DNA of 64,000 nt from assembly GCF_006345805.1 (NCBI RefSeq), contig NW_021832528.1:62001-126000 (forward strand), written 5' to 3'. The notes beneath the pieces were generated by a model, which made no database searches, had not been told where the DNA came from, and was given only the letters and a program-made list of their open reading frames with translations. This document shows positions 3,243 through 63,128 of the stretch, piece after piece; the first letter of the stretch is position 1; every line of letters starts with the position of its first letter. The position numbers and the translations under genes are program-made. This stretch comes from Octopus sinensis (lineage: Eukaryota).

Positions 3243-4173
3243 ATGAAGTCCATTGTGGTGGTTGTTTGTGGTATCCCGTGCAGTGGGAAAACATATTTTT
3301 GTAATGAAATAATGGGAAATAACGAATTAAATAAAGAATATAATATAATCCACATTTGTTACGACGATTTAATGCCCTTCTCCCCCACCGGTGTACTCGC
3401 TATAGAGCAGTCACACGAACGAAGACTGGCAGTCCTTGAGTTGATAGAACTGATCCTAACAGGCGGGAAGTGGAGTGAAATGGAGAAAATATACAATTAC
3501 CTGGACAGCAAGAATGAGGCAAGGAAACATATATTTGGCCGACTGTCGAATATATCCAAACAAAACGTGTTGTTGGTGGACGACAACATGTACTACACGA
3601 GCATGAGGAGACAGATCTACAAAGTGGCCCGCAATGGTAGTCCAGAATTGACACTCCAGTCCTCGCTGGGTACTGCCAGGTGTATGTCCGCACTGCTCTC
3701 CCCCACGCTCTCCACACCAATAGTCGGAGGACTGTCCCTCTTCCTCCTCACATCATTCGGGATATGGCACGCAAGTTCGAGCCTCCCAGACTGGACGGAA
3801 ATAGATTTTATGAGAAATATAGTCTGGTTATTGACACCCCTCCTTTCGATTATAAACTGTAGTGTTATCACATGTTTGTAGACATCAAGTTTATTCGTTC
3901 TTGAGGACTGTCACTGTCAGGCAGGGGGGTTGTTCTCAGGATTCCACAAGTGTCTTGCATGTTCTCGAACTTTCTCTGAGGAAATACGTGGGGGACTCAA
4001 TCAGAGCATACAAGGGTAGGCCTGACATTCCAAGACTGGCCTTCCAACTTGCACTGAGGAAGAAACGAGTTTACGCACAAGTCAGGCACTACTGGATGTG
4101 TGGGGATACCACCACTCCCTCCCTCTTTAAAATAGCCGCTGACTGTTTTCTAAAAAACCACGCACAAGTCTAA
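3243..4173 (+). CDS. PSTK: L-seryl-tRNA(Sec) kinase
   Basis: P-loop CGIPCSGKT, HICYDDL, LLVDDNMYYTSMRRQIYKVAR. A 23-nt intron (3637-3659) joins to GYCQVYVR..MARKFEPP; C-terminal LELSLRKYVG. Confidence 0.88.
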
Positions 4174-4250
4174 CAAAGGAGTGAATATGTTATGAGAAGT
4201 GTACAAGGAATGTGACAGTCTTGGCATTTCAGAAGAGTATGAATTGTTCA
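4173..4250 (-). pseudogene. ACBD3: duplicated 3' end of ACBD3
   Basis: Diverged direct copy of 5886-5965. Reads F*NAKTVTFLVHFS* versus FWNAKTVAFLVNFS*. Confidence 0.7.
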
Positions 4251-4269
4251 AAGAGTATATTCTTCAAGT

Positions 4270-5355
4270 ACTTTTTTATTGGCTTTGTCTTCCGCTTGGT
4301 CCTCTTTCCCACCTCCCGTGGACGAAAAGACTTCGAAAATTAAAGCAGGACACGGTGTCTCTATTTCTGCCTCGGAAGAGTGACTTGAGTAGAGAGGAAT
4401 GCCAAGCTCTGTTGATGGACTCGAAGGAGAGTTGTCAGGTTTTGATTGCCTTTGTCTTTTTCGGACGATGAAAGTTTGTGCAGTTGCCAAGGAAGATTGG
4501 GGTAGATTCTAGTTCTTAGTTTAGGAAATTATTTTGAGGACACGTGTTATTTGTACATATCTCTTGAGATGTTGTGTGATGGAGAAGGAGAGTTTTTTAT
4601 TGGGCTATTTCTTGCAAGTGAGTTGTGGACCTGTGGGAGTATGGCTGCAGTTATCCCTCAGTTTGAAGAACACACTCGAAAACACCCTCAATGACTTATT
4701 GGAAGTTATCAGACTTGAACAGGTAATGATTTGGGTTTATTTCGAAGCAAAAGGAGGAAATTCCTCGCTTTGTTTATTCATTCGACTCCTGCGAGTGAGG
4801 TTGTCCTCAGAATGATCCAACTGCAATGTACGGCAGGACCGATAACTTTGCGTTGTCGTAAGTCCACCAGTCTATGTAAGGTCGATGTGAATGTGTTCAT
4901 CTCAACCCACGACTGTGTTTACTGTTGAGTATTCCCTTCAAGTCTGAGAGAGACATGAAGGGAATTGTCTACTTGTGAATTGGGAGTCAGTCTGTCGAGG
5001 AGGAAGCGGACATTGCTCATTGCTGAGAAATATCATGCGAGGATTTGCTGTCTCCGTTATTGACGAGGGGTCTGAACCAGACGACTATTTCTGGAATATG
5101 TGGAGAATACGTTTGCGTATGACAGATTTGACATTTATTTAAGGATACGTACTTTTGGGAGGGTTGAGACTATTTCGTGGCTTTAAGGAGAACGAGTGTT
5201 TCACAGTGGTAGAGAAATGTACTGATTTCAGTCAGGTTGGCAATGATGATGCTAAGGCAGGCTGATTTGTCGACCATGCCTCGAAAATTGACGATTCAGA
5301 TACATCAAAGGAGCCAGGTCTTTTTAAGCGTTGTTTGCATGGGTGGAGGGGATAG
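4270..5355 (+). pseudogene. FLII: Flightless-I C-terminal gelsolin-domain fragment, unprocessed and decayed
   Basis: Collinear motifs DTVSLFLPRK, KFVQLP, WLQLSLSLKNTLE..LEVIRLEQ, SIPFKSE..GIVYL*IG, EGSEPDDYFW, RLFR..FTVVEKCTDFSQ, FKRCLHGW, with stops, frameshifts and an internal deletion. Confidence 0.8.
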
Positions 5356-5374
5356 TGAGAATGTATAATAAAGA

Positions 5375-6732: not shown

Positions 6733-6800
6733 GACACACGTCCCCTTAATTATATTTAATTTAAAATATTAATAAATAAAAGGAGAGTGTTGTAGTGTGT

Positions 6801-8623
6801 ATGGGCAGCCAAGAGTGTGTAAAGCGAAGCATAGCGAAACTGTTGATGGAGAGTGACCCCAAATTCCTAAGCAGCGTGATAACGTGGCTGGACAACATAG
6901 TGTGCCAACTGAAGGCGACGAACAACATAACATGTAAGGAGATTGTGTGATTGGGAGTCAATTCGGACAATTATGAAGAAGGATTCGACTTTCCGGGCAA
7001 TTTCGTGGCGTTGGTGGGTGGGACGAGTCCGGAGATGATCCTGGAGGCGATTCCGTGGATAGACATGAAGGTGTGTGAGGCGCGTGTGTTGGGGACGGTG
7101 ACGTTGGACGACGAGAAGGGTCTGAGTGAACCAGTGTGGGTGTCCAAGTGGGTGGAGTACACGGGGAGTGACCCCGATTGGAGTCGGCTGGTGTGTGCCG
7201 TGACGGACATGCTGGTGAAGGCGGAGGACGATCTGCAGGAGGTGATTGAGTGGCTGGAGAGGAAGGTGGCCTCCTATAAAATTGGTGGAGGAAGTTTTGA
7301 GAGTAATGTTGGCATGGAGGAGACGACTGATAAATTGAGGAGATTGGACGAGACCTTCCATCTCCTCGTCTCCACTGTGTCCGACCACTTGTTGATGACT
7401 TTTGTCCTCTGGATTGACCACAAACTGGCAGAAAATAGACTCACCAACGAGTTCTCATTCGGTCTATATATTTATTCATTCCAGACCCTCATGTCCCACT
7501 CTATGTCCCCGAATGGCTCAAAATCATCCAGTCCAATAACACCCAACAAATGTTCGAGGACACTCTCAGTCGATTCGACATCCACAAACTCCCCGTCCTC
7601 GTCCAAAACATCAGTCCCTCCAATGCCCTCTCCCTCGGACTCGCCCACTCCCCACATCCACAAGTCCTGTCCGTCAAACAAGTCAACCCTTCCAACCGTC
7701 CCCGACTCGACCCAGTCCCCACTTTCGTCACCGTCATTGAGTCCCCCTCCAATCGACCACCCCCCAAGAACAACCACGACTACACCTGTCCACACTGCTT
7801 CCTCAAAATGCCCGACATGAACAGTCTTAACCAACATCTCCTCGATAACGCCATTCCCTTCGAGTGGGTCAAGATGGGCGACCAAATGTCCATCATCATA
7901 GCCCAACAAAGTGACGACGAATCAGAAGAGGACAGAGTCCCCGTCTTCCAAGTGGCCACCCAGACCACCTTTAAGTTAGAACGATATTTATTCCCCCCAT
8001 TAAAGAAGTTCACTCCCTCCGCCTCCACCAGAAATGCCACCGACGGCCGAAGGATAGTCTCCGACAGTGTCAGGTCCAAGTTGGAACACGCTCGGTCGAT
8101 GAGGAAGTTTGGCAAGAGGACTGCCCGCTCCTCCACTGATGAGGAGGAAGATGTCGAGGACCCCTCCTATGGTTCCGTTATGAATCCTGGAGGTGAAGAC
8201 GACAGTCCCAAACTCAAGTCCCAGTACAAGGCACTCAAGGCAGTCTCCCGAGGAACTCGTTCTCGTCCATCGAGGAAGTGTCCCATTGATTTCTCCAGTC
8301 CTGAAGAAGAGGAAGAGGAGTCTGTCGAGAAAGTGACGAGTGCAAAGAGGAAGGCGACTGCCAAGGCGTTATTGGAGGATTCCGACTCGTCTGTCTCGTT
8401 GGAAGTGAGTTCTGAGTCATCTGGGAATGAAGAGCCCGTGGCAAAGAGGAAGCGATCGACGAGGAAGAGTGCGCAGTCCGTGGAGGAGACCTATCCATGT
8501 CCGTACTGTGAGAAAGTGTTTGAGGACCCGGGTATTTTGGGGGAACATTTGTTTGATCACGTCTACGCTGATAAACAGGGGGATGAGAATAATGCGGAAA
8601 ACCCTATTAAGAATGACGCTTAA
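6801..8623 (+). CDS. C2H2-type zinc-finger protein with acidic/basic low-complexity region
   Basis: ATG 6801; introns 6934-6957 (24 nt) and 7462-7484 (23 nt) join ORFs 6951 and 7550. Motifs YTCPHC..LNQHL and YPCPYCEKVF..LGEHLFDH. Confidence 0.75.
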
Positions 8624-10183: not shown

Positions 10184-10185
10184 TA

Positions 10186-10897: not shown

Positions 10898-12116
10898 TCA
10901 ACTATTTAAAGTGGTCTTTTGGAGTCTGTCAAGTCTATTGAGCAAAGACTGATTTTCAATTTCTGCATTGGCCAAGGAGTGTCTGGTCTCCCTCAGCCTA
11001 CTGCGGAGACTCCGATTGGCATTCCTGAGTGAGTCCTCCCCCTCTTCGCAGGCCAGAACGGACGATTGGTAGTGGACAATCTGACTCTCCAAACTGGCCA
11101 CCTTCCAATTTAGTCACACCGCCTCCACCCGGGTCTTCAAAGACGACATTTCCTGCATTTTCAAGGACTGTTCATTCTCCAGGCACTTCAGTCTCCGAGT
11201 GGTCTCCACTCTCACTAAACAAACTCATTTTGGACACTTTCCGAGTTCTGAAGGGAAGGCTGCCTCTCCCCACACGCCTCCTCTTCACTCTCCACGTTTT
11301 CCGACTCCAATAACTATATATATATTTTGAATATTACAGTTTTGGTGAGTTCTTCCCGCTCGGTCAGCAAACAGGCAAGTTTATCCTCTACGTCCAATTA
11401 GTCCAAAATATACCGAAATCCCCCGATTGTTTATATTCCTCTAATTTGGCCTTGAGACTATCAGACAGGACAGCCACTGAGTGTATGTCCTCACTCTGTC
11501 CTTCATTTTCAACAATGTTTAATAAATTACTTGTCTATATTATATATATTATTATTTATTAATTTAATTAATTATTATAATAAAATACTTGAATAATAGT
11601 ATCTCGTTGTTCTAACAGTCGTTTGGTGTGTGTCACTCTTTTGGACAAGTTCAAAGTGGCTTCCTTCAACTGACTCAACTCCTTAGGATAAATCAGGATA
11701 GCCAACATCAGTTTTTTGTTGAATGACTGATTTCTTCTGAATAAGAGTGTCCTGCAGTTCATAAATATACAATTGCTGGTCGTCCAGATGTGCCTGTAAG
11801 ACTGCTCTTTCCTCGTTATTCGTGTCAATATGTTATTCGCTTCCCTTAGCCTGTCTTGTGAGTAATTGGCCTGCAATGTTTGTTGGGTGTACTTCTCTGG
11901 TGATGGAGGGGGACTGTCCGTCCTCTGAGTTGGGGTTGTCGTCGGTTGTGTCTGTCAGTAAGGATTGCCTCTGGTCGAGATCTGCCTTTAGGAGAGTTCT
12001 GGCTTCTGTCACGATGGCTCTTTCGTTATTAATTTGTTGTTCAGCCTGGATTGATGTGTGTGATATACCTCCTCGTTTATTTTTATGAATGAGTTGACCA
12101 GTGACTCCTTATTCAT
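10898..12116 (-). CDS. unknown coiled-coil protein, multi-exon
   Basis: ATG 12116 MNKESLVNSFIKINEE, 21- and 22-nt GT-AG introns, and a heptad-like C-terminus LRNANRSLRSRLRETRHSLANAEIENQSLLNRL. Confidence 0.6.
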
Positions 12117-12167: not shown

Positions 12168-12779
12168 TTAGTTAGTAATTTTATTAGAAATAATATTTTT
12201 GACAATTTGTCCTCCTTTAGAAATAACTAAGAATATAAGGGAGAATAACCCTTATCGGAGACACCCCCCACATAGTCCGAGCCGGAATGGACAAGCCGGT
12301 CAATGTACTCCTCATTCTGCAAGAAGTAAGGGCGGACAATGGCATGGTAGATCATGACACTCCCATTGTGGCGGGAAGGGAGGTAGCACACAATCAGAAT
12401 GGCAGCCTACCCTCTCAACACCCCCCACCTTGAACACCCAATAGAGGGGTACCCACGACAGAATGATATCCGCGAATGTCTCAGTGACGGAGAGGAGTGC
12501 GTAGACCACCCAGTAAATGAGCCACACGACGTCGTCCTCCTTGTGGGGGGACTCGATGGCCTTAATACTGGCAATGAGGGGGGGACACAACGAGGCGTAG
12601 GTGGGGTAGCCCATTCCGATGAGAGTGCTCACCAACTGCCCTCCAATCCCCATCCCCACCAGCACGAACAGCACCCCCGACACCCCCAACCACATGTACG
12701 ACATGTTCCCTGTGTTCTGTATGTATCCTGTTATCTCTCTTATTTTCTTCTCGATCGTTGTGTTGTTCTTTTTCCTCAT
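12168..12779 (-). CDS. REEP5: receptor expression-enhancing protein 5/6 (TB2/DP1/HVA22 family)
   Basis: [49 protein letters not shown] after removing introns 12568-12591 and 12407-12428. Confidence 0.9.
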
Positions 12780-15917: not shown

Positions 15918-16466
15918 ATGAATTGTGTGGTGTGCCACAAACAGGAGGTCCCCTCCCAAAATTGTGAGTGGCAGGAGATTGTAGACGTGGGACTGTGCCA
16001 CACGTATTGTCTGAAGTGCAGTGTGTGCAGGGAGGATCTGAGCGAGGGGGAGACGTGTCTCGTCAGGAGTGGGCGCATATTCTGTCCTGCTGACTACTGC
16101 AAGTACTCTCTCACGATGACCAGGCTATATCGACACCAGTGCACTCTCTGTGGGCAGTGGCTGCAGAATGGACAATTCTATGTCCACTTGGAGGGACAAA
16201 TCTGTCATTTCGAGTGCCCACGGAAGTCTGGAGAACAAACAGACAAATCGGACGACTTGAGGAAATTGAGGGGCAATAAAAAACATCGACTGAGGACGAC
16301 GATCACTGAGTGGCAGAGGAAGGAATTGAACAAATATTTTTTGTACAATCCTCGACCAGATCGTGGGGAGAAGACAGCTTTGGCCACATGTCTTGAATTG
16401 TCCTGCAAAGTGATTGGCATTTGGTTTCAGAATAAAAGATGTGAATCAAAAAAACAGTCTTTTTGA
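15918..16466 (+). CDS. ISL1: Islet-type LIM-homeodomain transcription factor (shortened)
   Basis: LIM CxxC..HxxCxxCxxC..FC. Homeodomain RLRTTI..NPRPD..WFQNKRC..KK (NPRPD and NKRC are Islet-like). Two 21-nt introns, 15964-15984 and 16103-16123. Confidence 0.8.
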   Translation: MNCVVCHKQEVPSQNCEWQEIVDVGLCHTYCLKCSVCREDLSEGETCLVRSGRIFCPADYCKYSLTMTRLYRHQCTLCGQWLQNGQFYVHLEGQICHFECPRKSGEQTDKSDDLRKLRGNKKHRLRTTITEWQRKELNKYFLYNPRPDRGEKTALATCLELSCKVIGIWFQNKRCESKKQSF

Positions 16467-33643: not shown

Positions 33644-34317
33644 ATGAATTCATATAATTTCATTATACAGAATTATCGAATATCTGAGAACGTTTATTCA
33701 GATCACAATCAGCCTTCCATCCAAAATGAAATTGCTCCTCAGCAAATTCCGTGACTTTATACAAGCCTGATGTCAGCGACTTGGGTCTTGCCATTTCCAA
33801 TGATTACAAGGAAGACAACGTGCCTCATCTAATTACTGAAAAAGCAACAGTAAATGACGACACTCTTCAAAGAAAGTCTTTGGTAGAATTAGGAAACTAT
33901 TTCAAGACTAAAAGAATGAAATTTGGTTACTCCCAGTCCGAGATGGCCATTATAATGGAGAGAGGCGGGTTCCCCGTGTGTCAAACGACTATATGCAGAT
34001 TTGAGTTGGGTAAAGTCACAGCTACTTCAACGGCAAAACTGAAAGATGCTTTTTTGAGTGTTCTAGAATCTCTGAAGAAAAACCCAATTTCCAAGTCCCA
34101 CTTAAAGTCGCTCCCGAAAGCCAAAAAGAAACGAACATTTTTTGATAGAAAAACCAAAGAATACCTCGAAAATATTTTTTCAGTCAGCGTTTATCCAAAC
34201 AACGAAGAAATCGGGAAGATTGTAGCGGAGACTGACTTGCCGAAATATGTAGTCCGAGTCTGGTTTAAAAATAGAAGAAAGAGAGAACGTCGAACTATTT
34301 CTTCCGATGATCTATGA
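33644..34317 (+). CDS. POU-domain transcription factor (divergent)
   Basis: POU-specific domain FKTKRMKFGYSQ..CQTTICRFE; homeodomain KKKRTFF..VVRVWFKNRR. 26-nt intron 33751-33776. Start codon uncertain. Confidence 0.88.
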
Positions 34318-36016: not shown

Positions 36017-39000
36017 ATGACTTTTGTGCTCCTTTTATTTGTCCGAATTGAATCAGTTAGCCAGTTCTCACAAGAGGGATTTGTCTCAAAAGTAGCCGAG
36101 AGTATTCAGGAAATGGACCAAAGTCGATTTTGGAACATAACAGCCCACATTTGTAGTGAAACAGTATAGAACTGTCCATTCTCTGTTAGGCCTCAGTCGT
36201 ACTACTGCATGATGACGTGTCTAAACTAGTGAGGATATACACGTGAGGGACTGTGATTTAGTCAGGTAGATCCTCCTCCACGACACACCTTTACCCACTG
36301 GAGGTGGATGCCAGCATTGCCCACGTCTGCCCCTCCACCAATGATATATGGATAGTGGACAGTGCCCCTTATTCTACTCTCCTCAGACTGAAGGACTGCC
36401 ATTCCCTCAGCACACAGTCCACTCCCTTCAAAATCGACATCCTCCTCCCCCACCCTGAGGACTGTGACACAATGGTGGCACTGAGTGATATAACACGTGA
36501 CAATTATGCACGTGTTGGACATGTCTGATTATTATAGTTCATGTTTCTGACTGAGAATGGTGGAGTGACGTGGAGTCTGCTTAGCACTGATGTCTCTCTC
36601 GACAGTTGTGAGTGGAGGGGACACTCCAGGCTGTACTTCCTGAGGGATATTGAAGGTTGCTGTCCTCAGTCATGACTAAGGGGACACCCACCTAATCCTC
36701 TGCCGTATAAGGGACATGTGTCGGACTATCACCAACAATGTGACCAGGAATCACTTCCTCATTGGAGGGGCATTTGCCTACTTTGAAATAGATCAAAGGT
36801 ATAAGTCATCCTCATACCAGTACTGCCCACTACACCATTCCACTGTGGAGAGACCACTCGATTGTCCTCCCTCAATTCCTTCCCTCCCCTCCTCAGGTTC
36901 CCGCCCTCACTTTGTCCTAGAAAGTACTCCACTTTGAGGGGGATGGGGCCAGGATTATATTGGCGGCACTTCAAAGGGTTGATGACGTCACTGCTAGTTT
37001 ATATGTGTCTGATTCAAAGGGAAAATATTTCAAGAAAACAGTGACAAATATAATTAGTGAGCCCGTCCTTCAATTCATGAAAGTAATCATCGGCCATGAC
37101 CTGCCAGTTGTCGACCACTGTCCTCGTCAATCAACGTGACTCCTCGGAAAACATGTTGACTTTGATCTCTACGAACATGGGCAGCACATTTAGGAGGATA
37201 TCATTAAACCTTCACATAGGAAAGGAGAATGTTTTGAGTAGTCCCGACTGTCCAGGCTTGCTTATTCTCTACGGTTATTGCTGTGTGGGGAGGCTGGTAG
37301 GAATGGAGGGATCCCACTACGACACAAACATCCCACATCACGCCTACATATCTACCGACGGGGGAATTAATTTTAAAAAAGTATATTAATTAATAATTTA
37401 GACATTATCATTTCGACCAATAATTGGTTTCCTTGATGGTGGGTCTGTCCTCATTGCAGTGAATGCGACGATTGTTGGGCAGAGAATTAGCACTATTTTG
37501 TACTTTTCAATTGCCATTTGAGTTATTCTATCAACTACGGGGAGAGTTGGGAACACAAGGACACTCCTGTAGACATTGTCCCTCTCAGATTCGAACAGAC
37601 TTCTCGTTCTTCCTCAATAAGGTACATTTATTAGGATTATTAGACTCTTTGCATACAATGCCACCAACAATCGACTTTTGATCATCACTTTAAATCTCCA
37701 AGCTCTATTGGGACGAAAATGCTCTCAAAAGGATATATTAAATAATGTATTATATTTTAATAATATATTAATTAATAATAAAATTTATATAAAATAGGTT
37801 CATGTGGGGACATGTCATTATGGGATATCCTATCCCCTCGTTTATCGACAACCACATCGCCTATGCAGAGTGGCCCACCTAATGACCCCAAAATACTGCA
37901 ACTGCACAGCAGAGGACTACGAGTGGTATAACTAGAATGTAATATCAGTGACTCGTCTCCAATCCTATCAGAATGTATTAACAACGTCTCCAAATTCAAC
38001 TACAATTGCTGGGAAGGAGAACCCATTCGTTCGAATAACGAGTTCCCCTCTTGGTATATTTCAGTATCCGTCTAATTCCGGGGAACATGTGCCTGAATGA
38101 CCAGACCGAGGATATGAATGCCCCTCCCTGTCCATTCCAGCCCCCTTCCAACGTGAGCATAATCACTTCGGGGTACAAATCAGTGTTCAGAGTGCATGAG
38201 CAAGTCCACTTTATGATACTCCAATATAAGGTGGGTGGGGAGTGCCATGTGGTAGGGGTGGCGGTCCAATATCACGTGTGTCTGGGATTTTGGGGATGGT
38301 TACATATTGAGAATGGGGGAGGGGTGTTATAGTGTGAGGCATAAGTATGTGGACGGGGGTGACTACTCGGTTGGCGTGTCTCTCACACACAGACACCACT
38401 CCCTGTGGGTGAATGCCTCCATGGATGTCACAATTATTGGTGAGTGTAGTACTGTGGTAGTGTAGACACACAGTTGTATGGCAGTCTTGAATATGACAAG
38501 GATATTTTTGTGAATGAAATGTTTACTGTCCGAGTACACTCCAGTCTACTGAGTGACCACAAGGATGTAAATTCAAATGATTTTATTTATAAATATATTT
38601 TTAATGATGAGGTGATTAATATACATATATTTTAGTTATTGAATAACTCTATAATCACAGACACGAATACATGTGAGTATATATATACTACTCCTGGCCA
38701 GTATGTAGGCCACGTCACTACTTACTCTCACTACGGGTCTCACTCCAGTGAGTTCGTGGTTAATGTGCACGGAGAGCCCCGGATATATGAGTTGAAGTGC
38801 TCTCTGTGTGGTGAGCAACAATTTGTGACCCACAGGAAATATGTGATTGACGACTTGTACCTCCAACTTGTGAATGTTTGTGATTGGATTGAATTAGTAG
38901 TATTTGAAGCCGAATTACTTTCGTGTAGAAATGGATACTACTCGTGGTGGTGTCATTTTGGTTATTAAAATAGACGAGTCGACCTCCTCCGTATTATTAC

Positions 39001-39273
39001 TTATATTATTTATAGTGGGGGGATGTGAGGAGGGGACTAGTATTGAGTGTGGGGAGTAGAGAGTGTGTTTGTGGGGAATATTCGAGTGGATATTCGTGGA
39101 GATATCTCATCTCCGGATTGGTCGTTGCCATTGTGCTGGTTGGAATAATCCTCATATATTTGTTCTACAAGTATAATGACTGTTCTATATATAGGAAAAC
39201 GTGGATATCACGACTGGTGGGTAAAATGAAGCACTCTAAATATTTCGAATATAGGTTAACCACAATAGATTAA
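36017..39273 (+). CDS. VPS10-domain receptor with PKD domain and TM helix (SorCS-like)
   Basis: Signal-like MTFVLLLFVRIES; Asp-box motifs STDGG/STNMG; Cys-rich 10CC-like region; PKD-like EYIYTTPGQYVGHVTTYSHYGS; TM YLISGLVVAIVLVGIILIYLFY. Many micro-introns. Confidence 0.72.
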
Positions 39274-40016: not shown

Positions 40017-40525
40017 ATGAGTAAATTAATTGCTAATATTATTCTAGGTTTGCCAACTAAAATAATTCTATCCTCTACAGTGAAAAAATCCTCCTCACTT
40101 CAGAACAGTAAAACATCCCAAAGCAGTCCCCTGAAAGAAAACAGGCCTCCCAATGCTCAGAGTCGGTATAATTTGATCAAAAATCGTGAGCCATTTCGTC
40201 CTCAAATCCCCGAAAGACCCCCAATTGGTTAATTAAATGACCCATTTTAGAATTCGATGAGTTCAATCTCCACTCAGCAGCACGTGCAATTGATAGAAGA
40301 AAGGCCGACCAGGACTTTGAAGTAAACCGACTGATGCAACAACAGGAAAATGAGCATTCAAGGAGGGAGCGTGAGAAGGAGGAGATCTGTGCTATCAGGA
40401 GACAGGCCTCCTCCTTCCGAGCCTCACAAATACGCAAATATAAATCACTCCAACCAATATCAAGGCCTAAACTAACATTGCCCATTTCTCCTAAGTTCCA
40501 TTCCTACAGTTGGCAACGAAAATAG
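40017..40525 (+). CDS. TPX2: TPX2 C-terminal-domain protein (miniature)
   Basis: ATG, 27-nt intron 40021-40047, second short intron, then EFNLHSAARA..EKEEICAIRRQ..FRASQIRKYK..LTLPISPKF. Confidence 0.72.
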
Positions 40526-40927: not shown

Positions 40928-41679
40928 ATGGTGGTGACGTGAGGAGTAATATGATAGGACGTATTAACATACAATGGTGGAAGTGTTGCTGCAATGTGTG
41001 GAAAGAACTCAATCGCCTTTGCCTGTGACACACAGTTCGGAGTCCGCTACCAAGTAATATCCAACAATTTCTGCAAAATATTCCGCCTCAACAAACACGT
41101 CTACATTGCCATGTCAGGCTTCCAAAGCGACATTCTCACATTGTACCCCCCAACCTCCCCACCACAGCCACCACAATCTGCAGGCGGAGATCAGCCAATT
41201 CGAGTTGAACGAGCACAGGGAATTGAGTCCTCAAAGAGTGGCCAACATAGTCTCCTATATGTTGTATGACAAGAGGTTGACCTTCCACTCACCCACAGGT
41301 TTTCTCCCTGGTTTATTGAGCCAATCGTGGGAGGGATTTCCTTCACGGAGGAGGGGTCTCCCAGGCCTTATCTTGCCCATTTTGACTCGATTGGAAGTCT
41401 GTCGGAGACCTGTGACTTTGCAGCGTCGGGGACTGCTTGTGAGGCGTTGATTGGGTTGTCGGAGTATACTTATAAGGAGGGGATGGTTGGTCTGTGGGGG
41501 TTTTGTTTAGGAGGATGGGCCACTTTTTGAGGCTATTTCTCAGACCGTGTTGAATTCGGTTGATCAAAATGCCTTTTCGGGGAAGGGGGTTCTCGTTTTT
41601 ATTATGTTTGTGGGGGTTTTGATGTTGTAGATCTCCTGAGAGGGCTGTGGTCAGTACTTTGAAATGTAGGGGAGATTAA
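40928..41679 (+). CDS. PSMB3: proteasome subunit beta type-3
   Basis: M|DVLTYNGGSVAAMCGKNSIAFACD..FIEPIVGG..FAASGTA..LFEAISQ..VDQNAFSGKG..TLKCRGD*. Introns 40931-40957, 41143-41167, 41486-41510 and others. Confidence 0.95.
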
Positions 41680-42628: not shown

Positions 42629-43061
42629 ATGGTTTCTAGTGTGCTCTATTTATTCCCATATTTAGGTCCTATCTGTCTCTCTATCACTTCCCGATGATTT
42701 CGAGACCACATTCAACGACTTCAAATTGAAGCACAAGTATGACTACATCATCATCCACCTCAACGAAGACAAATCAAGCTTAGTCGTGGCCGATAAATGT
42801 GACACCTCTTCAAGAGAGAAGACTCAAATCTTTGAGGAAATGTCCGAGAAAGTCCTAAACCTCGACAAAAGCTGTTTCATTCTCTTTGATAACCCTTTCG
42901 CGTGGATCAAGTTCATAAAGGAACAAGAAGACGTCAAGACAAAAATGCTTCTGGCCTCTTCCTTCCAGAGTGTCCGAACGAGGTACAACACAGGCTATTT
43001 CGAGGCCTATGGACCCTCCGATATGGTTTATGGCACTTTTATTAACAATCGTAAATCCTAA
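42629..43061 (+). CDS. ADF/cofilin-family actin-depolymerising factor
   Basis: Intron directly after ATG. FNDFKLKHKYDYIIIHL, VKTKMLLASS..EAYGPSDM. The 3' end is uncertain. Confidence 0.75.
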
Positions 43062-49143: not shown

Positions 49144-49220
49144 AAAAATGGGCTAAAATATCTTATTTTATTAAATCTTGAAAAAATACAAAATTCTAAT
49201 ATATATAATCAGTCCTTGAG

Positions 49221-49950
49221 ATGTATTCAATAAGCAAAGAGCAGGCCGAATACTACTCATACTACTTTGACATGCTGCGGGCAGATCACGTGTCTATTCC
49301 AGGTTATGAGTATGTCATTGACCACTAGGGAGAGCGTTGATTAGTTTTTTTGAAAAATCCAAATTGTCCAAAAATTTGTTGGCCTTCATTTGGGAGACTG
49401 CCGACAAAGACCAAGACGGGCGACTAAATAAAGCGGAATTTGTGGTTGCCACACACATGGTAGTGCTCTTCATTCATGGATATTCTGTCGACCCATCGAA
49501 TGCACTAATTATTCATAAATATGCCAATGAACTATTTTCGAATTCAATTGACTTATCCAACCATTCTTCTGTGAACAAAGAACAGGACAATTCTAACAGT
49601 TTATACTACACTTTCCTAAGCATACTTTATTTATAGAAATGAAACCTCTGGGTCAGTCTTCGGAGGACAGCGTTTCCAATCGACCCTCCGGGATATTTTC
49701 ACATATGTCCAGTTTGGGAGAAAAAGGATGGAAGGAATACATGGAGGACTATTTTCGATCCCCAGAGGGTGTTGCTACAGACGAAAAACTCAAAAAACTT
49801 TCCAAAATTTTAGGCCAAGTGGAGTTTGAAAGAATTTATTTGAGCAATAAACTAAAGAAATATAAACTGTTTGAGTAATTACCATTTCTTGTGTTCTAAT
49901 ACAGGAAGATAATGAGACGTGGAAATACTCGACATTAGTCAGATTAGTGT
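49221..49950 (+). CDS. EH-domain protein (EPS15/intersectin-like single EH)
   Basis: MYSISKEQAEYYSYYF..PGRALISFFEKSKLSKNLLAFIWETADKDQDGRLNKAEFVVATHMV. The 3' end is uncertain. Confidence 0.75.
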
Positions 49951-55199: not shown

Positions 55200-55305
55200 G
55201 GACGATGTCTGCTTTGGACTCAAACTCGTGGAGGCATTTGACAACTCAGGATCAGCCAATGGCCGGACACGGGTGATTACGGCTTTAACTAACTAACTAA
55301 CTAAC
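55200..55305 (+). repeat. GC-richer segment ending in (TAAC)5; possible LINE/SINE 3' end
   Basis: Perfect TAAC x5 at 55286-55305. Confidence 0.45.
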
Positions 55306-56895: not shown

Positions 56896-56981
56896 GTCCC
56901 ACAACAGCTATTATTATTAATAATTTATTTAATAATAATATTAAAAAATAATAATAAAATAATTAATTATTTAAAAACAAA

Positions 56982-57900
56982 TCAATCAGACCAAACCCCC
57001 TCAGACTCATTATCAGAACAGTTAATAGACACCCTCCTCTTCTCCAAAGCAGTGTTGAGAGCAGATATCATTCCACAGGCAGGCTGTACCCCCCTCTTAT
57101 CCCCCACAGGATTTAGTTTAACCCCCCCAGCCCGAATAGCCTCCATTAACACACTCCTCTTGCCCTCCTCAGCCGGAGACTTGCCTTGGCCGTTTTTGTC
57201 GACTTTGGGAGGGTTTTGATTGGTTTTTGATACTTTTATGCTCAATTCGGCCATCAATCCTTCAAAGGAGACCTTTCGGGGAGATATAGCCGAGATATTC
57301 TCCTCTTTTTTGGCATTTTGGACTACCTGAGAGGACTCCTCGGGGATTTTATGGTCAGAAAAATCCGCGTTTTTTTGTTCCACGGTCATTTCACGGTTTT
57401 TATTGCTCATAAATGTCCTCATAATCTAAAATATATTAATACTAGTTAATATATACATAATTTATATCATAAGAATCTTCTAGATTACGAATTATTGATT
57501 TTCTGAGTGATATTTTGACAGAGGAGTCCAGAATTTGAAATTTCTGGGGCTTTTCGCACGTGTTGAGTGCTTCTTTTAAGGGTTCTGGAATTTTCTCGAA
57601 CGGATTTGGCGGGCTTTTAAAATTGATGTTCATTTTAGTCCATTTAGGGGTGAAATTGTGGATTTTTTGACTTAAATTTTGTTGTTTATTGCCAAGTGAG
57701 TTTGTGATGTTTGATATTTCAGTAATTTCGAGTGATATTTTAGTGAATATGTCACGAGAGCGTGAGGATAGGTCACTGATTTGTCTCATTATGTTGACAA
57801 ATGCACATCCCGTCATAAAATTGAATGAATTTTGGGCAGATTCGGGGACCTCAGGGTCATATAGCTGCTCATTCTTGACTGTATTTATGTTTAAAGGCAT
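56982..57900 (-). CDS. WASF: WAVE/SCAR-family actin nucleation-promoting factor
   Basis: N-terminal SHD MPL..MTGCAFVNIMRQISDLS..DIF. C-terminal WH2 RSVLMEAIRAGGVKL, central LEKRR, acidic SDNESEGVWSD. Confidence 0.85.
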
Positions 57901-57904
57901 GCCA

Positions 57905-58140
57905 CACGTGAAATAATCAAAATATAAATAAATTTAAATATTTTTAAAAACTAAATTATTATTAAATTAAATATAAATGTATATTTAATATATAAAAATT
58001 TGAATAATTTTATTCTTTTTATATTAAAATCATTTTATATTATAATAAATTTTTAATTTAAATTAATTATTATTATATTAATTCCCATAATAATTATAAT
58101 AACATAAATAATAAAATATTAAATATATTCAAATATATTT
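57905..58140. promoter_or_regulatory. near-pure AT bidirectional promoter between WAVE and MED17
   Basis: About 230 nt almost devoid of G/C between divergent ATGs, bracketed by CCACA (57902) and TGTGG (58143). Confidence 0.6.
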
Positions 58141-58151
58141 GCTGTGGTTAA

Positions 58152-60027
58152 ATGGATACCCCACCTATCAATCCTCATGTTAGTCTAGAAGTCTCGCTAG
58201 AATGTGACGTACGAGAAATACTGCCAGATGGAGAGGAAATATATATTAAGTTAATTCAAAATATTATTCCCAGACCATCCACATTCGCCGAAAAAGTAGG
58301 GACACAAAACATTCAAATAATCAACCAAAAAATAAAGGAAAACAACAAAACTATTCCAAACACAACTCATCTGTCCACAATAAACCAAAATTTAAAGTAA
58401 AACACAAATAAACTAATTTCAGACTCGCCTACCAAGAAGTTGTCGTCCTCGGCGATTTGCTCAAAATATCCTCCATAAAAAACGATAAATATATCACACT
58501 TCAAAAAAGTCATAATTTTCCCGCCAATACTTCAAATGGCGGCATATCCTTTGATCTTCAAAGCAGAAAATTTGTATGAAAATGACCGTCATTTTTAGGC
58601 TTTAAGTCGGGCATATAAAGCCCTAATTGACGGTGCAGAAAAACTCGAGCGTGAAAGATTCGGCAAAGATCAAAGCAAGCGGAGTTGCCTTGATGTTAGC
58701 CGCGAGATTCTGAGGCTGAGGACCCTCTGGCATTTGAAAAGGACCCCCAGTGGGATTACAGGAGAATTAGACATAAATCCACAAGGTTATTTATTATATT
58801 AAATATAAAAAATATATTTAAATTAATTATTTTAAATAAATTGTCTAGTGTCAAATGATTCTTGTGGTGCCACTACATTTAGTTTAATCTGCGACGAAAA
58901 CGGTGTGTTTACAGTGTCCCTACCAGACGAACTAAAGTGGCCATTATCCCTTAAACTCTCCTCCACAAAAACATGTTTCAACATTGATCTTGTGGGTGAT
59001 TATACAACAAGAACAAACCCTGCTTCAATAATCCTCCAAAGAGCTCAGAATACTATAATTGTTCAAAAACTATTCCAAACTGTATTTTTGACTATTCAAA
59101 TATACTAGTTGTGTCTGGAACATGTTGTTTGTGATACTGCAAGAGTGTTGGGAGATCGGATTGTACTCGACATGGCTAATCTAGTATATTCATTACCAGT
59201 AGTTGATTCTCTGTAGTCTGTGTTGGACAGTCCTCTATTTACTGCTACATTTGAGTACATACTTTATTACATATATGTGACCCACATGACAAGTATTGTT
59301 TATTATTTTATTATTAATTAATTAAATAATATTTTAATTAGAATTTAAATCAAAAATTAATCTTTTGAATAAAGTGATTATTCTTTTAAAGAACTGCAAT
59401 TTGAGACATTGGTTTGACTGATTTGTTATTTCAGCCTAATTGAGTGTCTAAAGTCCACAAAATTGACTGATGGAGTCACAACCAAGGCTGTGGAGGACTC
59501 CTGTCAGTCCTTTGACTGCATTCGAATGCAGATTGTAATGAAATTGGCCAATGTCCCATTCCAGTGAGAATTTGTGGGGATTTTGTGGTAGAAACAAGTT
59601 TTTTGTCGAGATTTGTGAAGGGAAAATACGAGTAGTCACCAGCAGGCATAAAATGGTGGATAATTTGACTCAAATTGGCCATATTTTGCACAGAGAAGTA
59701 ATTTTTTGTTGATTTTTGTAGGCAATGTTATTCAAGTGTGATATTGTTGCATTATTTGCCGCCAAATTTGGATTTATTGAATGCAGTCCACGTGTGTTAG
59801 AAAATTGGTCAGGTGAGACAATTTCAAAGGACGAGGCTGTATGTGTATTCCATAGGAAATTAGTGTAGTGTGTGATTAAGGAGTGTAGGTGTGTGGTGGT
59901 GGTTGTGTCCCCCAACGAGGATGTCCGTGTGTTGAGGACAAGGTGGCCTTTGGTTGAGAAAAATGTGCCCGAATTGTCAGCACGTGACTTTGTGTCCACA
60001 TTGGAAGCTGTTTTTTATTTGGAATGA
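58152..60027 (+). CDS. MED17: Mediator complex subunit 17
   Basis: AYKALIDGAEKL..SREILRLRTLWHLKR..ITGEL parallels MED17 GAERL..NSELLRLRQHWKLR..ILGDL. C-terminal GKIRVV and RDFVSTLE. Many micro-introns. Confidence 0.7.
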
Positions 60028-60211
60028 TATATATTGATCTTAGAGTTGTTAAATTGGATTAATTAATAGTATAAGTATATATGTAGACAATGCGGACTAA
60101 TTAGGAAGCCAAATGGAGATGTTAGACCAAGCAGTAAATTCAAATAAATAACAAAAATAGAAATTTAAATCAAAATGGGGAATAAAAAACCGTCGATTAA
60201 ACTCATTAAAA

Positions 60212-61820
60212 ATGTCCCCAGTTAGTTTAAGTTGGCTGAAAACATTTGTAATCAACACGTCAGGAAAGTTGTACTTTTATTGGCTGTCACTCATGTTTTT
60301 GGTGGTGTTGTACAACACACTCATTCTGACAGCCAGATGGTCATTCTGGCGACTGCAGGAGGACTTTTCAGTGGCTTGGACTGTGTTGGATGTGTTTTCA
60401 GATGTGGTTTATGTGATTGACATATTCCTCAAGTCCAGGGAAGGTGAGAGTTGTCCGCAATGTAGGCTTCCTTGAACAGGGAATTGTGGTGACTGACATT
60501 AAAAAGTTGGGACAAAAATATAGGGCGACTTTGCAGTTTAAATTGGACATTATTTCAGTCATCCCTCTGGACTATCTTTACTTCACAAACCGAGGACTAT
60601 TCGATAATTATTTCCCCGAAATGCGAGCAAATAGAATTCTAAAAATATATGTAATCGTCAAATATTTCAACTTGGTGGAAAACAAAACCAAATTTCCTAA
60701 CATTTTCCGAGTGATTGAACTAGTGGCTTACATCCTGATTATAATCCACTGGAATGCCTGTGTGTATTTCTCAGTCAGCAATTCGATTGGATTCTGTTCT
60801 GACCGATGGGTGTACGACATGTGTGGGTCAGGGAAGGACCAGTTGATATATATGTATATATACAGCTTCTATTGGTCTACTCTCACTTTGACTACAATTG
60901 GAGAAGTCCCTCGACCTGTCACTAATTTTGAACATTTTTTTGTAGTCCTCGACTTTTTAATCGGGGTCCTCATCTTCGCAACCATCGTGGGGAATATTGG
61001 GAGTATGGTCACCAACATCAACTCCTCGAGGATCGAGTTCCAACAGAGCATGGACGGGGTTAAACAGTACATGGAATTACGCCATGTTGACAAATCACTG
61101 CAAATTAAGATCCTCAAATGGTTCAACTATCTTTCCGCAAATAAACAGTCTCTTAATGATGACAAGGCTCTCGATATTCTCCCAAGCAGACTCAGGGCTG
61201 AGATTGCTCTTAATCTTCATTTTGAGACACTCAAACAAGTCAAATTATTCAAAAATGTCGAGGCTGGTCTTCTCATGGAAGTTGTTCTTAAACTCCGACT
61301 TCAAGTCTTCAATCCCGATGACTATATCTGCAGAAAGGGGGACATTGGGAGGGAAATGTATATTGTCAAAAAAGGGATCCTCAACGTCGTCTCCGAGGAC
61401 GGGAACACAATTTTTGCCACCCTCAAGGAAGGTGCTATTTTTGGGGAACTGAGCATTATGAATATTCCTGGGAATAAGACTGGGAATAAGCGGAGTGCTA
61501 GTATCCGCAGTTTTGGGTACAGTGATCTGTTTGTGCTACAGAAGGATGACTTGTGGGATGTCCTTAAGGAATATCCCGAGGCTGAAAAAACTTTCATAGC
61601 CACGGGGGAAGAGATTCTTAGAAAGGATGGTCTTTTGGACGAGGAATTGGCCGAACAGGCCAAAATTGATAGAGAAAATGAAAAATTGCAAATTTTGGCT
61701 TTGTCGAGTAAAGTTGATAAATTGGAGAGGACTCTTGTCTCCTTTATTGGGACATTTGAATCGCGACAAATTCAACTAAAAAATAGATTGGATTCGCTTG
61801 AGGGTCGAATAAATATATAA
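60212..61820 (+). CDS. CNGA: cyclic nucleotide-gated cation channel alpha subunit (CNGA/TAX-4-like)
   Basis: 22-nt intron 60444-60465. GFLEQG, IHWNAC, pore YWSTLTLTTIGE, VLIFATIVGNIGSM, C-linker, CNBD ICRKGDIGREMYI..FGELSI..RSASIRS. Confidence 0.96.
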
Positions 61821-61991
61821 TTCTATTTTAATGTCATTTTTTAAATACATTTTTGAATAACAATTTTTCTTTTCCTGAATTAATAAGTTTTTTCAAACTA
61901 AATAATTTGTTATTTCTATCAATGTTAATAATTTATAAAATATATTCTAAACATATTTTTTAAATATTTTTAAATATATCACGTTGCATTA

Positions 61992-63128
61992 ATGATAAGA
62001 AAGCAGATTCTATTTGGCTTGTTTCTTGGCCAGTTTGTGTCCTTAGCCATATTCGGGACCTCAATAACAAGCGAATATTTGCAAGAAAAAAATTTTAATG
62101 TTCCTTTAAGTAACATATTCATTAAAAATTGTCTTTCTAGCTCAAAATATTTTCTTTTATCTGATCATATCAATTTTTACATGTTCATACAGTCTCTACA
62201 AAAAGTTAAATTCAAAAATTTGGATTGTTCTTAAGTAAGTATGTTCTCAAACACTAAGAGAAAATTGGATAGCCTTTTTACTAGTTTCAGTAACAGACGT
62301 CGAAGGCAATTATTTGGTAGTGAAAGCCTACAGTAATGCAAATATAACAAACATCCAAGTTAACTTATTTCTATATTCTAGTTAATGGATTCGCTTATTA
62401 TTGTCACTGTGTTTATAATCTGTTCTACACTACTCAAAGTTAAATATAAAATTGTGCATGGAATATGTATAATTGCTGTCCTTTTCGGTTCAAGTTGTCT
62501 TGTTGTTGGGGATATTTTATTATATGGATATTCAGGTTTTTTGATAAAAAATATTTTTTAGGTTTTAAATCTATTTCTGGACTTGTTTTTGCTTTTTTTG
62601 GTTTTGTTAGTTATGGTATTTCTAATGTCATCCAAGAATATATTGTCAAGACTACCAATACGCTACAATTCATGACAATTTTTAGCACATTTGGGTTACT
62701 TATAACAGCCGCACAAATGTAGTATATATATGTAATGCCAGGGCTATTTTAGAGTATGAAACACTTAAAAAAGTGCCCTTCAATGGATATATTGGAGGGG
62801 CGATTGTCGGATATACCAGTTGTATGATCTTTATATATTCTCTTGTACCTTACGTAATGAAATACAGCGGAGCTTTGATGTTAAATATAGGTGTATTGTC
62901 GTCGGATATATTTACGCATATCTATGGGTATATACGACTTCATTATAAAGTATGTATAGGATTAATTTTTAGTTTCATTATTTACATGTTTTTGCGTTTT
63001 TTGTTGTGACGTTTGGAGGTGCGACTTATGCTTTTTATGAACCCGCATCCGAACCTGATTATACACTTTTTAAAAAAATAACAACAGTGAAACAAAAAGA
63101 GAACATAAATGAAATTGATCTTATTTAA
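61992..63128 (+). CDS. SLC35F2: solute carrier family 35 member F1/F2-like
   Basis: LGQFVSLAIFGT, DVEGNYLVVKAY, SYGISNVIQEYIVK, SGALMLNIGVLSSDI. Multiple introns. Confidence 0.85.

What the first reader, a model, noticed from the sequence alone, without database searches (positions are those of the whole stretch)
3637..63000. Miniature 21-28 nt spliceosomal introns in animal genes, some with no pyrimidine tract
Seen: conserved reading frames require GT-AG introns of 21 nt (ISL, twice), 22 (CNG, REEP5), 23 (PSTK, zinc finger), 24, 25, 26 and 27 nt. Some are almost all G/T (GTGGGGGGTGTTGAGAGGGTAG) with no polypyrimidine tract or clear branch motif. Ancestral-looking positions are kept, such as directly after ATG in PSMB3 and cofilin. 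Established: these are far below usual animal intron lengths; introns of this size are reported in dicyemids, ciliates and nucleomorphs. Inference: splice sites are defined mainly by length and GT/AG by a reduced spliceosome.
Basis: partly seen in the sequence, partly recalled or inferred. Interest (0 to 1): 0.7.

Follow-up and report, generated by a model that had tools for sequence, protein, structure and literature searches.

The report
Dicyemid-type tiny introns in octopus assembly
The 21-31-base introns are real, but the DNA is almost certainly from a dicyemid kidney parasite that was assembled and annotated as Octopus sinensis, and such tiny introns have been known in dicyemids since 2007.

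Summary
Twenty GT-AG introns of 21-31 nt (19 of them 21-27 nt, mode 23) are supported by gap-free alignment of the spliced proteins to homologues or Pfam profiles. They lie in PSMB3, a CNG channel, REEP5-like, KTI12/PSTK-like, ISL-like, sortilin-like, SLC35F and REPS-like genes. Another 24 rest on reading-frame continuity only.

The window is contig VCDQ01001575.1 (62001-126000) of the Octopus sinensis assembly, but it is not octopus DNA. The host has its own CNG orthologue on another contig, with a 5.45-kb intron at exactly the position and phase of the window's 22-nt intron. The window's copy is only about 53% identical to cephalopod CNG channels.

The packed animal genes, 36% G+C, 'GTa...AG' splice signals and narrow length range match published Dicyema genomes, and O. 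sinensis is the host D. japonicum was collected from. A second contig, 98% identical, shows these segments changing about four times faster than the flanking exons and tolerating 1-nt indels.

The biology is already known. One of the two ISL introns cannot be decided. No cDNA and no dicyemid reference sequence could be reached.

The parts
3637..3659 (+). 23-nt intron, KTI12/PSTK-like gene (3243-3862)
   Evidence: Pfam KTI12 is 60.6 bits spliced against 34.5 unspliced, and the match extends to profile position 141. The frame shift is visible.
12568..12591 (-). 24-nt intron 1, REEP5-like gene (about 12227-12705)
   Evidence: Pfam TB2_DP1_HVA22 is 94.4 bits with the 24-nt version, against 87.2 with the 21-nt alternative donor. 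It is in frame and has no stop, so it rests on homology only.
12407..12428 (-). 22-nt G/T-rich intron 2, REEP5-like gene (GTGGGGGGTGTTGAGAGGGTAG)
   Evidence: The unspliced product matches only profile positions 1-52 (67.6 bits); the spliced product matches 1-77 (94.4 bits).
16103..16123 (+). 21-nt intron, ISL-like LIM-homeobox gene (15918-16466)
   Evidence: The unspliced protein aligned to ISL1 (4jcj) shows one gap of exactly 7 residues at this spot. It is in frame and has no stop.
15948..15984 (+). Two overlapping 21-nt candidates (15948-15968, 15964-15984) for a first ISL intron; undecided
   Evidence: LIM scores are 23.2 bits retained against 24.4 and 24.9 spliced. Retention gives a C-x2-C-x21-H spacing and splicing gives x14.
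37381..37401 (+). 21-nt intron, sortilin-like gene (about 36017-39273)
   Evidence: It carries in-frame stops. The SorLA alignment is gap-free across the junction.
37500..37522 (+). 23-nt intron, sortilin-like gene
   Evidence: The SorLA alignment is continuous across 'RISTIF|YSINYGESWE'.
37622..37643 (+). 22-nt intron, sortilin-like gene
   Evidence: The SorLA alignment is continuous at the junction.
37926..37948 (+). 23-nt intron, sortilin-like gene; splits the Cys codon of the conserved EDYEC|D
   Evidence: Aligned to SorLA 'CTREDYECD' without a gap.
40931..40957 (+). 27-nt intron directly after the ATG, PSMB3 (40928-41679)
   Evidence: The exon-2 frame has no ATG before it. The spliced protein aligns from M1 to human PSMB3 M1.
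41143..41167 (+). 25-nt C-rich intron, PSMB3
   Evidence: Gap-free alignment to human PSMB3 across the junction.
41276..41298 (+). 23-nt intron, PSMB3
41486..41510 (+). 25-nt intron, PSMB3, with no internal A (GTTGGTCTGTGGGGGTTTTGTTTAG)
   Evidence: The alternative 21-nt donor breaks the frame, as the sequence shows.
41606..41630 (+). 25-nt intron, PSMB3
   Evidence: The C-terminus then aligns to the end of human PSMB3.
42632..42665 (+). 34-nt intron directly after the ATG, cofilin/ADF gene (42629-43061); inferred
   Evidence: The ORF has no usable in-frame ATG before its ADF domain (Pfam 15-121 of the model).
49310..49332 (+). 23-nt intron, REPS-like EH-domain gene (about 49141-49875)
   Evidence: Gap-free alignment 2-77 to REPS2 19-94 across the junction. 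Pfam EH match.
60444..60465 (+). 22-nt intron, CNG channel gene (60212-61820)
   Evidence: tblastn. It has the same position and phase as the 1.0-kb Lingula intron and the 5.45-kb octopus intron. It restores Ion_trans profile positions 1-60.
62110..62140 (+). 31-nt intron, SLC35F gene (about 61974-63125)
   Evidence: The spliced model matches Pfam SLC35F in one stretch, residues 9-296 to profile positions 2-291, 201 bits.
62235..62258 (+). 24-nt intron, SLC35F
   Evidence: It carries an in-frame stop and has 3 substitutions against the allelic contig.
62359..62381 (+). 23-nt intron, SLC35F
62536..62561 (+). 26-nt intron, SLC35F
   Evidence: It is 27 nt in the allelic contig, a 1-nt indel.
62719..62741 (+). 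23-nt intron, SLC35F
6934..6957 (+). 24-nt candidate intron, zinc-finger gene (6801-8623); frame continuity only
7462..7484 (+). 23-nt candidate intron, zinc-finger gene; an A+T-rich island joining two long frames
36164..39047 (+). Nine further sortilin-gene candidates: 36164-36189 (26), 36243-36269 (27), 36514-36537 (24), 36914-36938 (25), 37083-37107 (25), 38042-38064 (23), 38324-38345 (22), 38612-38635 (24), 39025-39047 (23)
   Evidence: Frame continuity in a gene with Sortilin-Vps10 and Sortilin_C matches.
33751..33776 (+). 26-nt candidate intron, POU-homeobox gene (to 34317)
   Evidence: Frame continuity only.
40228..40250 (+). 23-nt candidate intron, TPX2-domain gene
   Evidence: Frame continuity only.
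49212..49234 (+). 23-nt candidate intron, REPS-like gene
   Evidence: Frame continuity only.
62996..63018 (+). 23-nt candidate intron, SLC35F, at the edge of the Pfam match
58397..59108 (+). Three candidates in an unnamed gene: 58397-58422 (26), 58574-58598 (25), 59082-59108 (27)
   Evidence: Frame continuity. The first is 27 nt in the allelic contig, and the second has 3 substitutions there.
11215..11892 (-). Four candidates in coiled-coil ORFs: 11871-11892 (22), 11388-11413 (26), 11314-11337 (24), 11215-11237 (23)
   Evidence: Frame continuity only.
57426..57456 (-). 31-nt candidate intron in an unnamed gene (56985-57933)
   Evidence: Frame continuity only.

Best explanation
The window is nuclear DNA of a dicyemid mesozoan (Dicyema-type kidney parasite of octopuses) that was co-assembled and annotated as Octopus sinensis. 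Its genes carry ordinary U2-type GT-AG spliceosomal introns shrunk to about 21-27 nt, as published for dicyemids.

Shown here: the segments must be removed to restore conserved proteins, their length range is very narrow, at least one sits at an ancestral intron position and phase, and they evolve faster than the flanking exons and tolerate frame-breaking indels.

Inferred: each intron is recognised as a whole unit. U1 pairs with a minimal 'GUa' donor. U2 uses a branch nucleotide, usually an A, about 15-17 nt from the donor and 5-7 nt before the AG. A 3-4 nt U-rich stub replaces the pyrimidine tract. These signals carry too little information to pick the real sites, so further cues must contribute; candidates are lower G+C than the exons, exon context, or clearance of mis-spliced RNA.
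For: Origin: the CNG ORF is 100% identical to XP_036355014.1 on VCDQ01001575.1 of GCA_006345805.1, and the next best hits reach only 55-56%. A genuine O. sinensis orthologue clusters at 90% or more with O. bimaculoides, O. vulgaris and Argonauta. It spans 31 kb, with 23.7-kb and 5.45-kb introns. The window holds at least 14 animal genes in 64 kb, including ISL, POU, sortilin, CNG and SLC35F. G+C is 36.0% against 36.7% for D. japonicum, which was collected from O. sinensis (PMC6736024). Dicyemids have an Islet gene and divergent POU genes (PMC6543705).

Introns: searches give the homology support. The donor is reduced to 'GTa' and the acceptor to 'AG', with weak A residues upstream, as reported for D. 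japonicum (PMC13644364). Published dicyemid lengths are 26.2 +/- 1.9 nt, verified against cDNA (PMC2222250), and a median of 27 nt (PMC6543705). The CNG intron position and phase are identical in Lingula and octopus. In the allelic contig, exons differ at 28 of 2494 nt (20 synonymous, 8 not, no indel) and introns at 7 of 149 nt including a 1-nt indel, Fisher p = 0.003, with all GT and AG ends kept.
Against: No dicyemid reference sequence could be reached, so the taxon is inferred, not matched. Searches with PSMB3 and with an innexin fragment found no close relative, and the paper supplements held no sequences. No cDNA or read data were available, so removal from mRNA is not directly shown for this locus. 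The median here (23-24 nt) is a little below the published 26-27 nt. Two introns (REEP intron 1, ISL 16103-16123) are in frame without stops and rest on homology spacing alone. The evidence for a branch-site A is weak (p about 0.01 with 44 introns, 24 of which are not homology-verified).
Confidence: 0.83

Rival explanations
1. The DNA comes from another tiny-intron eukaryote living with the octopus: a myxozoan, a renal ciliate such as Chromidina, an apicomplexan, or an undescribed parasite.
For: Myxobolid myxozoans have 22-27-nt introns with the same reduced 'GTa...AG' signals (PMC13644364). No dicyemid sequence match was obtained.
Against: The genes are animal-specific (LIM-homeobox ISL, POU homeobox, sortilin, an innexin next door) and use the standard stop codons, which excludes ciliates and apicomplexans. 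The best CNG matches are lophotrochozoans (annelid, bivalves, nemertean), and no cnidarian appears among the best 120. From general knowledge, dicyemids are the common kidney parasites of octopuses; D. japonicum itself was collected from O. sinensis.
Confidence: 0.09
2. These are genuine octopus genes that happen to have miniature introns.
For: The contig is deposited and RefSeq-annotated as Octopus sinensis. Its G+C is like that of octopus DNA (36.9% in L004).
Against: The host has its own CNG orthologue, 90% or more identical to those of other octopods, with kilobase introns, canonical GTGAGT and a long pyrimidine tract. The window copy is about 53% identical to cephalopod CNG. Gene density here is about one gene per 4 kb.
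Confidence: 0.02
3. The segments are not introns. They are assembly indel errors or pseudogene frameshifts, or DNA that is cut out of the somatic genome rather than spliced from RNA.
For: No RNA data were available here. Unusual circular DNAs are described in dicyemid assemblies (PMC6543705).
Against: All 20 homology-backed segments start with GT, end with AG and are 21-31 nt long. They are present with the same ends in a second, independently assembled contig. The exons between them show purifying selection, 20 synonymous to 8 non-synonymous changes. One sits at an orthologous spliceosomal intron position and phase. Genomic and cDNA clones of Dicyema genes differ by exactly such segments (PMC2222250).
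Confidence: 0.03
4. Mechanistic rival: splice sites are set essentially by GT, AG and spacing alone, read by a reduced spliceosome.
For: Information outside GT and AG is only about 1.5 bits in total. A position weight matrix anchored on the intron ends separates real introns from decoys only weakly (AUC 0.70-0.75). The length spread is small (SD 2.3 nt).
Against: There are 159 decoy GT(N17-23)AG pairs in 7,044 nt of verified exon, about eight per real intron, and they are not depleted relative to codon shuffles. Real introns differ from decoys in G+C (0.37 against 0.48). They also show position-specific A and T enrichment and G depletion near the 3' end. A canonical U2 snRNA branch-pairing region and U2AF orthologues are reported for the comparable myxozoans.
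Confidence: 0.1

Closest known systems
Ultra-short spliceosomal introns of Dicyemida (Dicyema acuticephalum, D. japonicum, Dicyema sp.; Aruga 2007 PMC2222250, Ogino 2010, Zverkov 2019 PMC6543705, Lu 2019 PMC6736024, PMC13644364 2026)
   Same: GT-AG ends. A narrow length range in the 20s. The donor is reduced to 'GTa' and the acceptor to 'AG'. Weak A residues lie a few bases before the AG. Ancestral positions are kept. Proteins are highly divergent, G+C is about 36%, transposon debris is frequent, and the octopus host is the same.
   Different: The median here is 23-24 nt, against a published 26-27 nt (small sample; the species may differ). The sequence is filed under the host's name. No direct sequence match to a named dicyemid could be made with the tools at hand.
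Ultra-short introns of myxobolid myxozoans (Henneguya, Thelohanellus, Myxobolus; PMC13644364)
   Same: Median 22-27 nt, the same reduced splice-site logos, and parasitic animals.
   Different: They are cnidarian parasites of fish and annelids. The window's CNG is closest to lophotrochozoan proteins, and the DNA comes from an octopus sample.
Tiny introns of ciliates (Paramecium 20-35 nt, Stentor 15-16 nt) and of the Bigelowiella nucleomorph (18-21 nt)
   Same: The size class. Recognition must span the whole intron, with a very short distance from branch point to AG.
   Different: They are not animals. Ciliates use altered stop codons, whereas here the genes are animal-specific and TAA, TAG and TGA all act as stops.

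Membership tests
U2-type GT-AG spliceosomal introns | GT at the 5' end and AG at the 3' end, at boundaries fixed independently by homology | tested here: met
   20 of 20 homology-backed junctions (list). The ends are conserved in the allelic contig.
U2-type GT-AG spliceosomal introns | Removal restores a continuous conserved reading frame | tested here: met
   PSMB3 aligns end to end. KTI12 gains 26 bits, TB2_DP1_HVA22 gains 27 bits and Ion_trans gains 20 bits with profile positions 1-60 restored. SLC35F matches in one 288-residue stretch.
U2-type GT-AG spliceosomal introns | Positional orthology with introns of other species | tested here: met
   The CNG intron lies in phase 1 in the Gly codon before (Y/F)LE(Q/H)G. 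Lingula has a 1.0-kb intron and O. sinensis a 5.45-kb intron at the same place. This was tested for one intron only.
U2-type GT-AG spliceosomal introns | Absent from mature mRNA; lariat with a branch point | not testable with these tools
   No cDNA or reads were reachable. There is only a positional A enrichment at -7 to -9 (36 of 44, p = 0.01). One intron has no internal A.
Dicyemid ultra-short introns | Narrow length distribution in the 20s | tested here: met
   The homology-backed set averages 23.8 nt, SD 2.3, with 19 of 20 in 21-27 nt. Published values are 26.2 +/- 1.9 nt and a median of 27 nt.
Dicyemid ultra-short introns | Reduced splice-site logos ('GTa', 'AG'), no long pyrimidine tract, weak upstream A residues | tested here: met
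   A at +3 in 48%, and no signal at +4 to +6. Position -3 is C or T in 80%, and T is 48-59% at -4 to -6. A peaks at -7 and -9. This matches the description in PMC13644364.
Dicyemid ultra-short introns | The host genome is that of a dicyemid | tested here: inconclusive
   The DNA is not octopus. It is animal and nearest to lophotrochozoans, and the sampled host species, G+C and gene set are consistent. No dicyemid sequence was available for direct comparison.
Myxozoan ultra-short introns | Cnidarian (myxozoan) genome | tested here: not met
   The best CNG relatives are annelid, mollusc and nemertean, and no cnidarian is among the best 120. This is weak, single-gene evidence.
Ciliate or nucleomorph tiny introns | Ciliate or algal gene content and genetic code | tested here: not met
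   LIM and POU homeobox, sortilin and SLC35F genes are present. PSMB3 ends at a TAA aligned with the human C-terminus.

The most novel reading that the evidence does not exclude
The two 'octopus' contigs may come from a dicyemid lineage or population not represented by the published genomes. Its introns would have a mode of 23 nt, shorter than reported, and would include A-less and pyrimidine-poor examples. Because the splice-site information is demonstrably too small to separate real sites from exonic decoys, recognition would depend on a cue not yet described, such as composition contrast or a strict molecular ruler combined with surveillance.
Probability: 0.15. Interest if true: 0.45.

Novelty: already known. 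Interest (0 to 1): 0.25.

Why it matters
The biology is established: dicyemids are, with myxobolid myxozoans, the animals with the shortest introns.

The practical point is curation. At least two contigs of about 250-275 kb in the Octopus sinensis reference assembly, and RefSeq proteins built on them (XP_036355014.1, XP_029657656.1), appear to be parasite DNA. A gene finder that cannot-nt introns has mis-modelled them. Such entries can mislead comparative studies of cephalopods.

These contigs are also long-read dicyemid sequence with allelic variation. That material can be used to ask how 22-nt introns are told apart from the roughly eightfold excess of look-alike sites in exons, a question the published work leaves open.

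Tried and rejected
1. I counted ORF-joining candidates for all 256 end-dinucleotide pairs. This was uninformative, because any two neighbouring ORFs can be joined by many pairs.

2. An ORF-length-maximising exon chain finder over-predicts everywhere and got 2 of 3 PSMB3 introns wrong. I used it only as a source of candidates and as a length control.

3. A codon-usage version was too weak; PSMB3 was not even recovered.

4. The search for cDNA or close relatives found nothing. PSMB3 had no hit at E <= 1e-20. The innexin C-terminus from the same contig found nothing. P0002 looked closer but is a duplicated chimera.

5. The supplements of the two dicyemid genome papers hold no sequences to compare. 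No paper reporting this contamination was found.

6. The sortilin N-terminal half is too divergent for junction-level checks.

7. Rfam and tRNA scans found nothing, so no snRNA gene could be inspected.

8. Pfam scores could not settle the first ISL intron.

Full report
WHERE THE WINDOW COMES FROM. The 467-residue ORF at 60417-61817 is 100% identical to a RefSeq protein labelled Octopus sinensis (XP_036355014.1). All other hits reach only 55-56% identity. The gene lies on contig VCDQ01001575.1 (274,785 bp) of assembly GCA_006345805.1. Matching the fetched locus to the window places the window at 62001-126000 of that contig. The window has 36.0% G+C.

IT IS NOT OCTOPUS DNA. O. sinensis has its own CNG orthologue (XP_036355899.1). 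That protein clusters at 90% or more with those of O. bimaculoides, O. vulgaris and Argonauta, and its gene spans 31 kb with introns of 23.7 and 5.45 kb. The window's copy is about 53% identical to the cephalopod protein. The window packs at least 14 animal genes into 64 kb. They are a KTI12/PSTK-like kinase, a zinc-finger protein, REEP5-like, ISL-like LIM-homeobox, POU-homeobox, sortilin-like, TPX2-domain, PSMB3, cofilin/ADF, REPS-like EH, CNG and SLC35F genes, plus unnamed ones. Reverse-transcriptase and DDE transposase debris lies between them.

Animal-specific genes and ordinary stop codons exclude ciliates and apicomplexans. The best CNG relatives are annelid, bivalve and nemertean proteins. 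Dicyema japonicum was collected from O. sinensis and has 36.7% G+C, 49% repeats and very short introns (PMC6736024). Dicyemids have an Islet gene, divergent POU genes and many innexins (PMC6543705), and an innexin gene lies just beyond the window on the same contig. I therefore read the window as dicyemid DNA assembled with its host. This is inference. No dicyemid sequence could be reached for a direct match.

THE INTRONS ARE REAL. PSMB3 needs five GT-AG introns of 27, 25, 23, 25 and 25 nt, the first directly after the ATG. The spliced 208-residue product aligns from end to end with human PSMB3 (1-208 to 1-205, E 4e-47). Its single 3-residue gap is away from every junction.

For the CNG gene, consecutive residues of the Argonauta protein map to 60179-60445 and 60462-61802 in different frames. 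Removing 60444-60465 (22 nt) restores Ion_trans profile positions 1-60, which the RefSeq model lacks (82.5 against 62 bits). That model reads straight through the intron.

For the KTI12/PSTK-like gene, the 23-nt intron at 3637-3659 raises the Pfam score from 34.5 to 60.6 bits. For the REEP5-like gene, the quoted G/T-rich 22-mer (12407-12428, minus strand) and a 24-nt intron (12568-12591) raise the score from 67.6 bits (profile positions 1-52) to 94.4 bits (positions 1-77). A 21-nt alternative for the second gives 87.2 bits.

The SLC35F model, with introns of 31, 24, 23, 26 and 23 nt, matches its Pfam profile in one stretch: residues 9-296 to profile positions 2-291, 201 bits. Four sortilin introns (21, 23, 22, 23 nt) lie inside a continuous alignment to SorLA. 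One REPS-like intron (23 nt) lies inside a gap-free alignment to REPS2.

For the ISL-like gene, the unspliced protein aligned to ISL1 shows exactly one gap, of 7 residues, at the 21-nt candidate 16103-16123. The other 21-nt ISL intron has two overlapping candidates, both in frame and stop-free. Pfam scores differ by under 2 bits, so I leave it open.

That makes 20 homology-backed introns, with a mean of 23.8 nt and SD of 2.3 nt. Another 24 are supported only by frame continuity. They include the 34-nt intron after the cofilin ATG and the 23-nt zinc-finger intron.

MORE THAN CHANCE. A mechanical ORF-chaining program allowed 18-45 nt. It inserted 462 GT-AG joins outside the curated genes or on the antisense strand, and 30.5% of them were 21-27 nt. 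Of the 20 homology-backed introns, 19 fall in that range (p = 2e-9).

EVOLUTIONARY EVIDENCE. A second contig of the same assembly (VCDQ01011809.1) is collinear with window 55513-64000 at 98% identity. Across the CNG and SLC35F genes, exons differ at 28 of 2494 nt, with 20 synonymous changes, 8 non-synonymous changes and no indel. The six homology-backed introns there differ at 7 of 149 nt, including a 1-nt indel (Fisher p = 0.003). Another candidate intron also changes from 26 to 27 nt. No GT or AG end is altered.

The 22-nt CNG intron lies in phase 1 in the Gly codon before FLEQG. Lingula has a 1.0-kb intron, and the octopus host a 5.45-kb intron, at exactly that codon and phase. This is the conservative exon-intron structure described for dicyemids.

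SIGNALS AND LIKELY MECHANISM. Across the 44 introns the donor is 'GT' followed by A in 48%, with nothing at +4 to +6. The acceptor is YAG in 80%, preceded by a T-rich stub (48-59% T at -4 to -6). A peaks at -7 (45%) and -9 (39%), and G is nearly absent around +17 and +18. An A lies at -7 to -9 in 36 of 44 introns, against 63% expected (p = 0.01). In the longer introns these A residues lie further from the AG (13-17 nt in the 31-nt SLC35F intron). That fits a roughly fixed distance from the donor. The same picture is published for D. japonicum (PMC13644364).

Some introns do lack a pyrimidine tract (the REEP 22-mer), and PSMB3 intron 4 has no internal A. Other 'G/T-rich' introns end in T runs, which are pyrimidines. 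Intron G+C follows local G+C (r = 0.5).

Verified exons (7,044 nt) contain 159 GT(N17-23)AG decoys, as many as codon shuffles give (161 +/- 12). Adding the A and YAG features still leaves 25. A leave-one-out matrix on the intron ends separates real introns from decoys only weakly (AUC 0.70-0.75). Real introns are lower in G+C, 0.37 against 0.48.

My reading, which is inference, is ordinary U2-type splicing with recognition across the whole intron. It would use a minimal donor, a branch nucleotide 5-7 nt before the AG, and further unidentified cues. Retention would be mostly harmless to detect: 25 of 44 introns carry a stop in the upstream frame, and most others shift the frame.

VERDICT. The phenomenon has been known in dicyemids since 2007 (PMC2222250; PMC6543705). 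What this window adds is a curation point, namely dicyemid contigs and mis-modelled proteins filed under Octopus sinensis. It also gives a small quantitative illustration that the visible splice signals are insufficient. The missing pieces are a direct match to a named dicyemid and RNA evidence for this locus.

Noticed in passing
window 60212-61820; L001, L002: RefSeq proteins XP_036355014.1 and XP_029657656.1, labelled Octopus sinensis, are built on these parasite-like contigs.
   Followed up: yes
L002 (VCDQ01011809.1) against window 54479-64000: A second contig is 98% identical and collinear from 55513 to 64000. It carries about 940 extra bases between the CNG and SLC35F genes. Upstream, similarity drops to 77% (54479-55001) and then disappears. 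It could be a haplotype or another individual of a parasite population.
   Followed up: partly
window 41486-41510: PSMB3 intron 4 (GTTGGTCTGTGGGGGTTTTGTTTAG) has no A except in the terminal AG, so any branch nucleotide would have to be a non-A.
   Followed up: partly
window 37746-37796: A 51-nt, almost pure A+T GT-AG segment seems to be needed to continue the sortilin-like frame. It would be a longer intron outside the usual size class and is not verified by homology.
   Followed up: no
window 14692-14969 (ORF 14573-15535, minus strand): A 69-nt tandem repeat (about 4 copies, 77-82% matches) lies inside a long ORF. It encodes repeated 'PDLIAK..NS.ATASP' peptides next to a weak thyroglobulin type-1 match.
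   Followed up: no
window 40587-40763: A 54-nt tandem repeat (3.3 copies) lies in the short gap between the TPX2-domain gene and PSMB3.
   Followed up: no
window 1957-3052, 21551-22272; L002 20410-21630: Transposon debris lies between the genes: a reverse-transcriptase fragment (RVT_1), a pogo-type DDE_1 transposase fragment, and an integrase (rve) gene on the allelic contig. This fits the repeat-rich dicyemid genome.
   Followed up: partly
L001 19001-19633 and 21907-22095 (beyond the window end): There is a 211-residue ORF of unknown kind, and the C-terminal exon of an innexin gene on the minus strand. Neither found relatives in the word-indexed search.
   Followed up: partly
window 40931-41630 and 12407-12591 against 36164-39047 and 62110-63018: Intron composition follows the gene. 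Introns are C-rich or G/T-rich in the G+C-richer PSMB3 and REEP genes, and nearly pure A+T in the sortilin and SLC35F genes (r = 0.5 with flanking G+C).
   Followed up: partly
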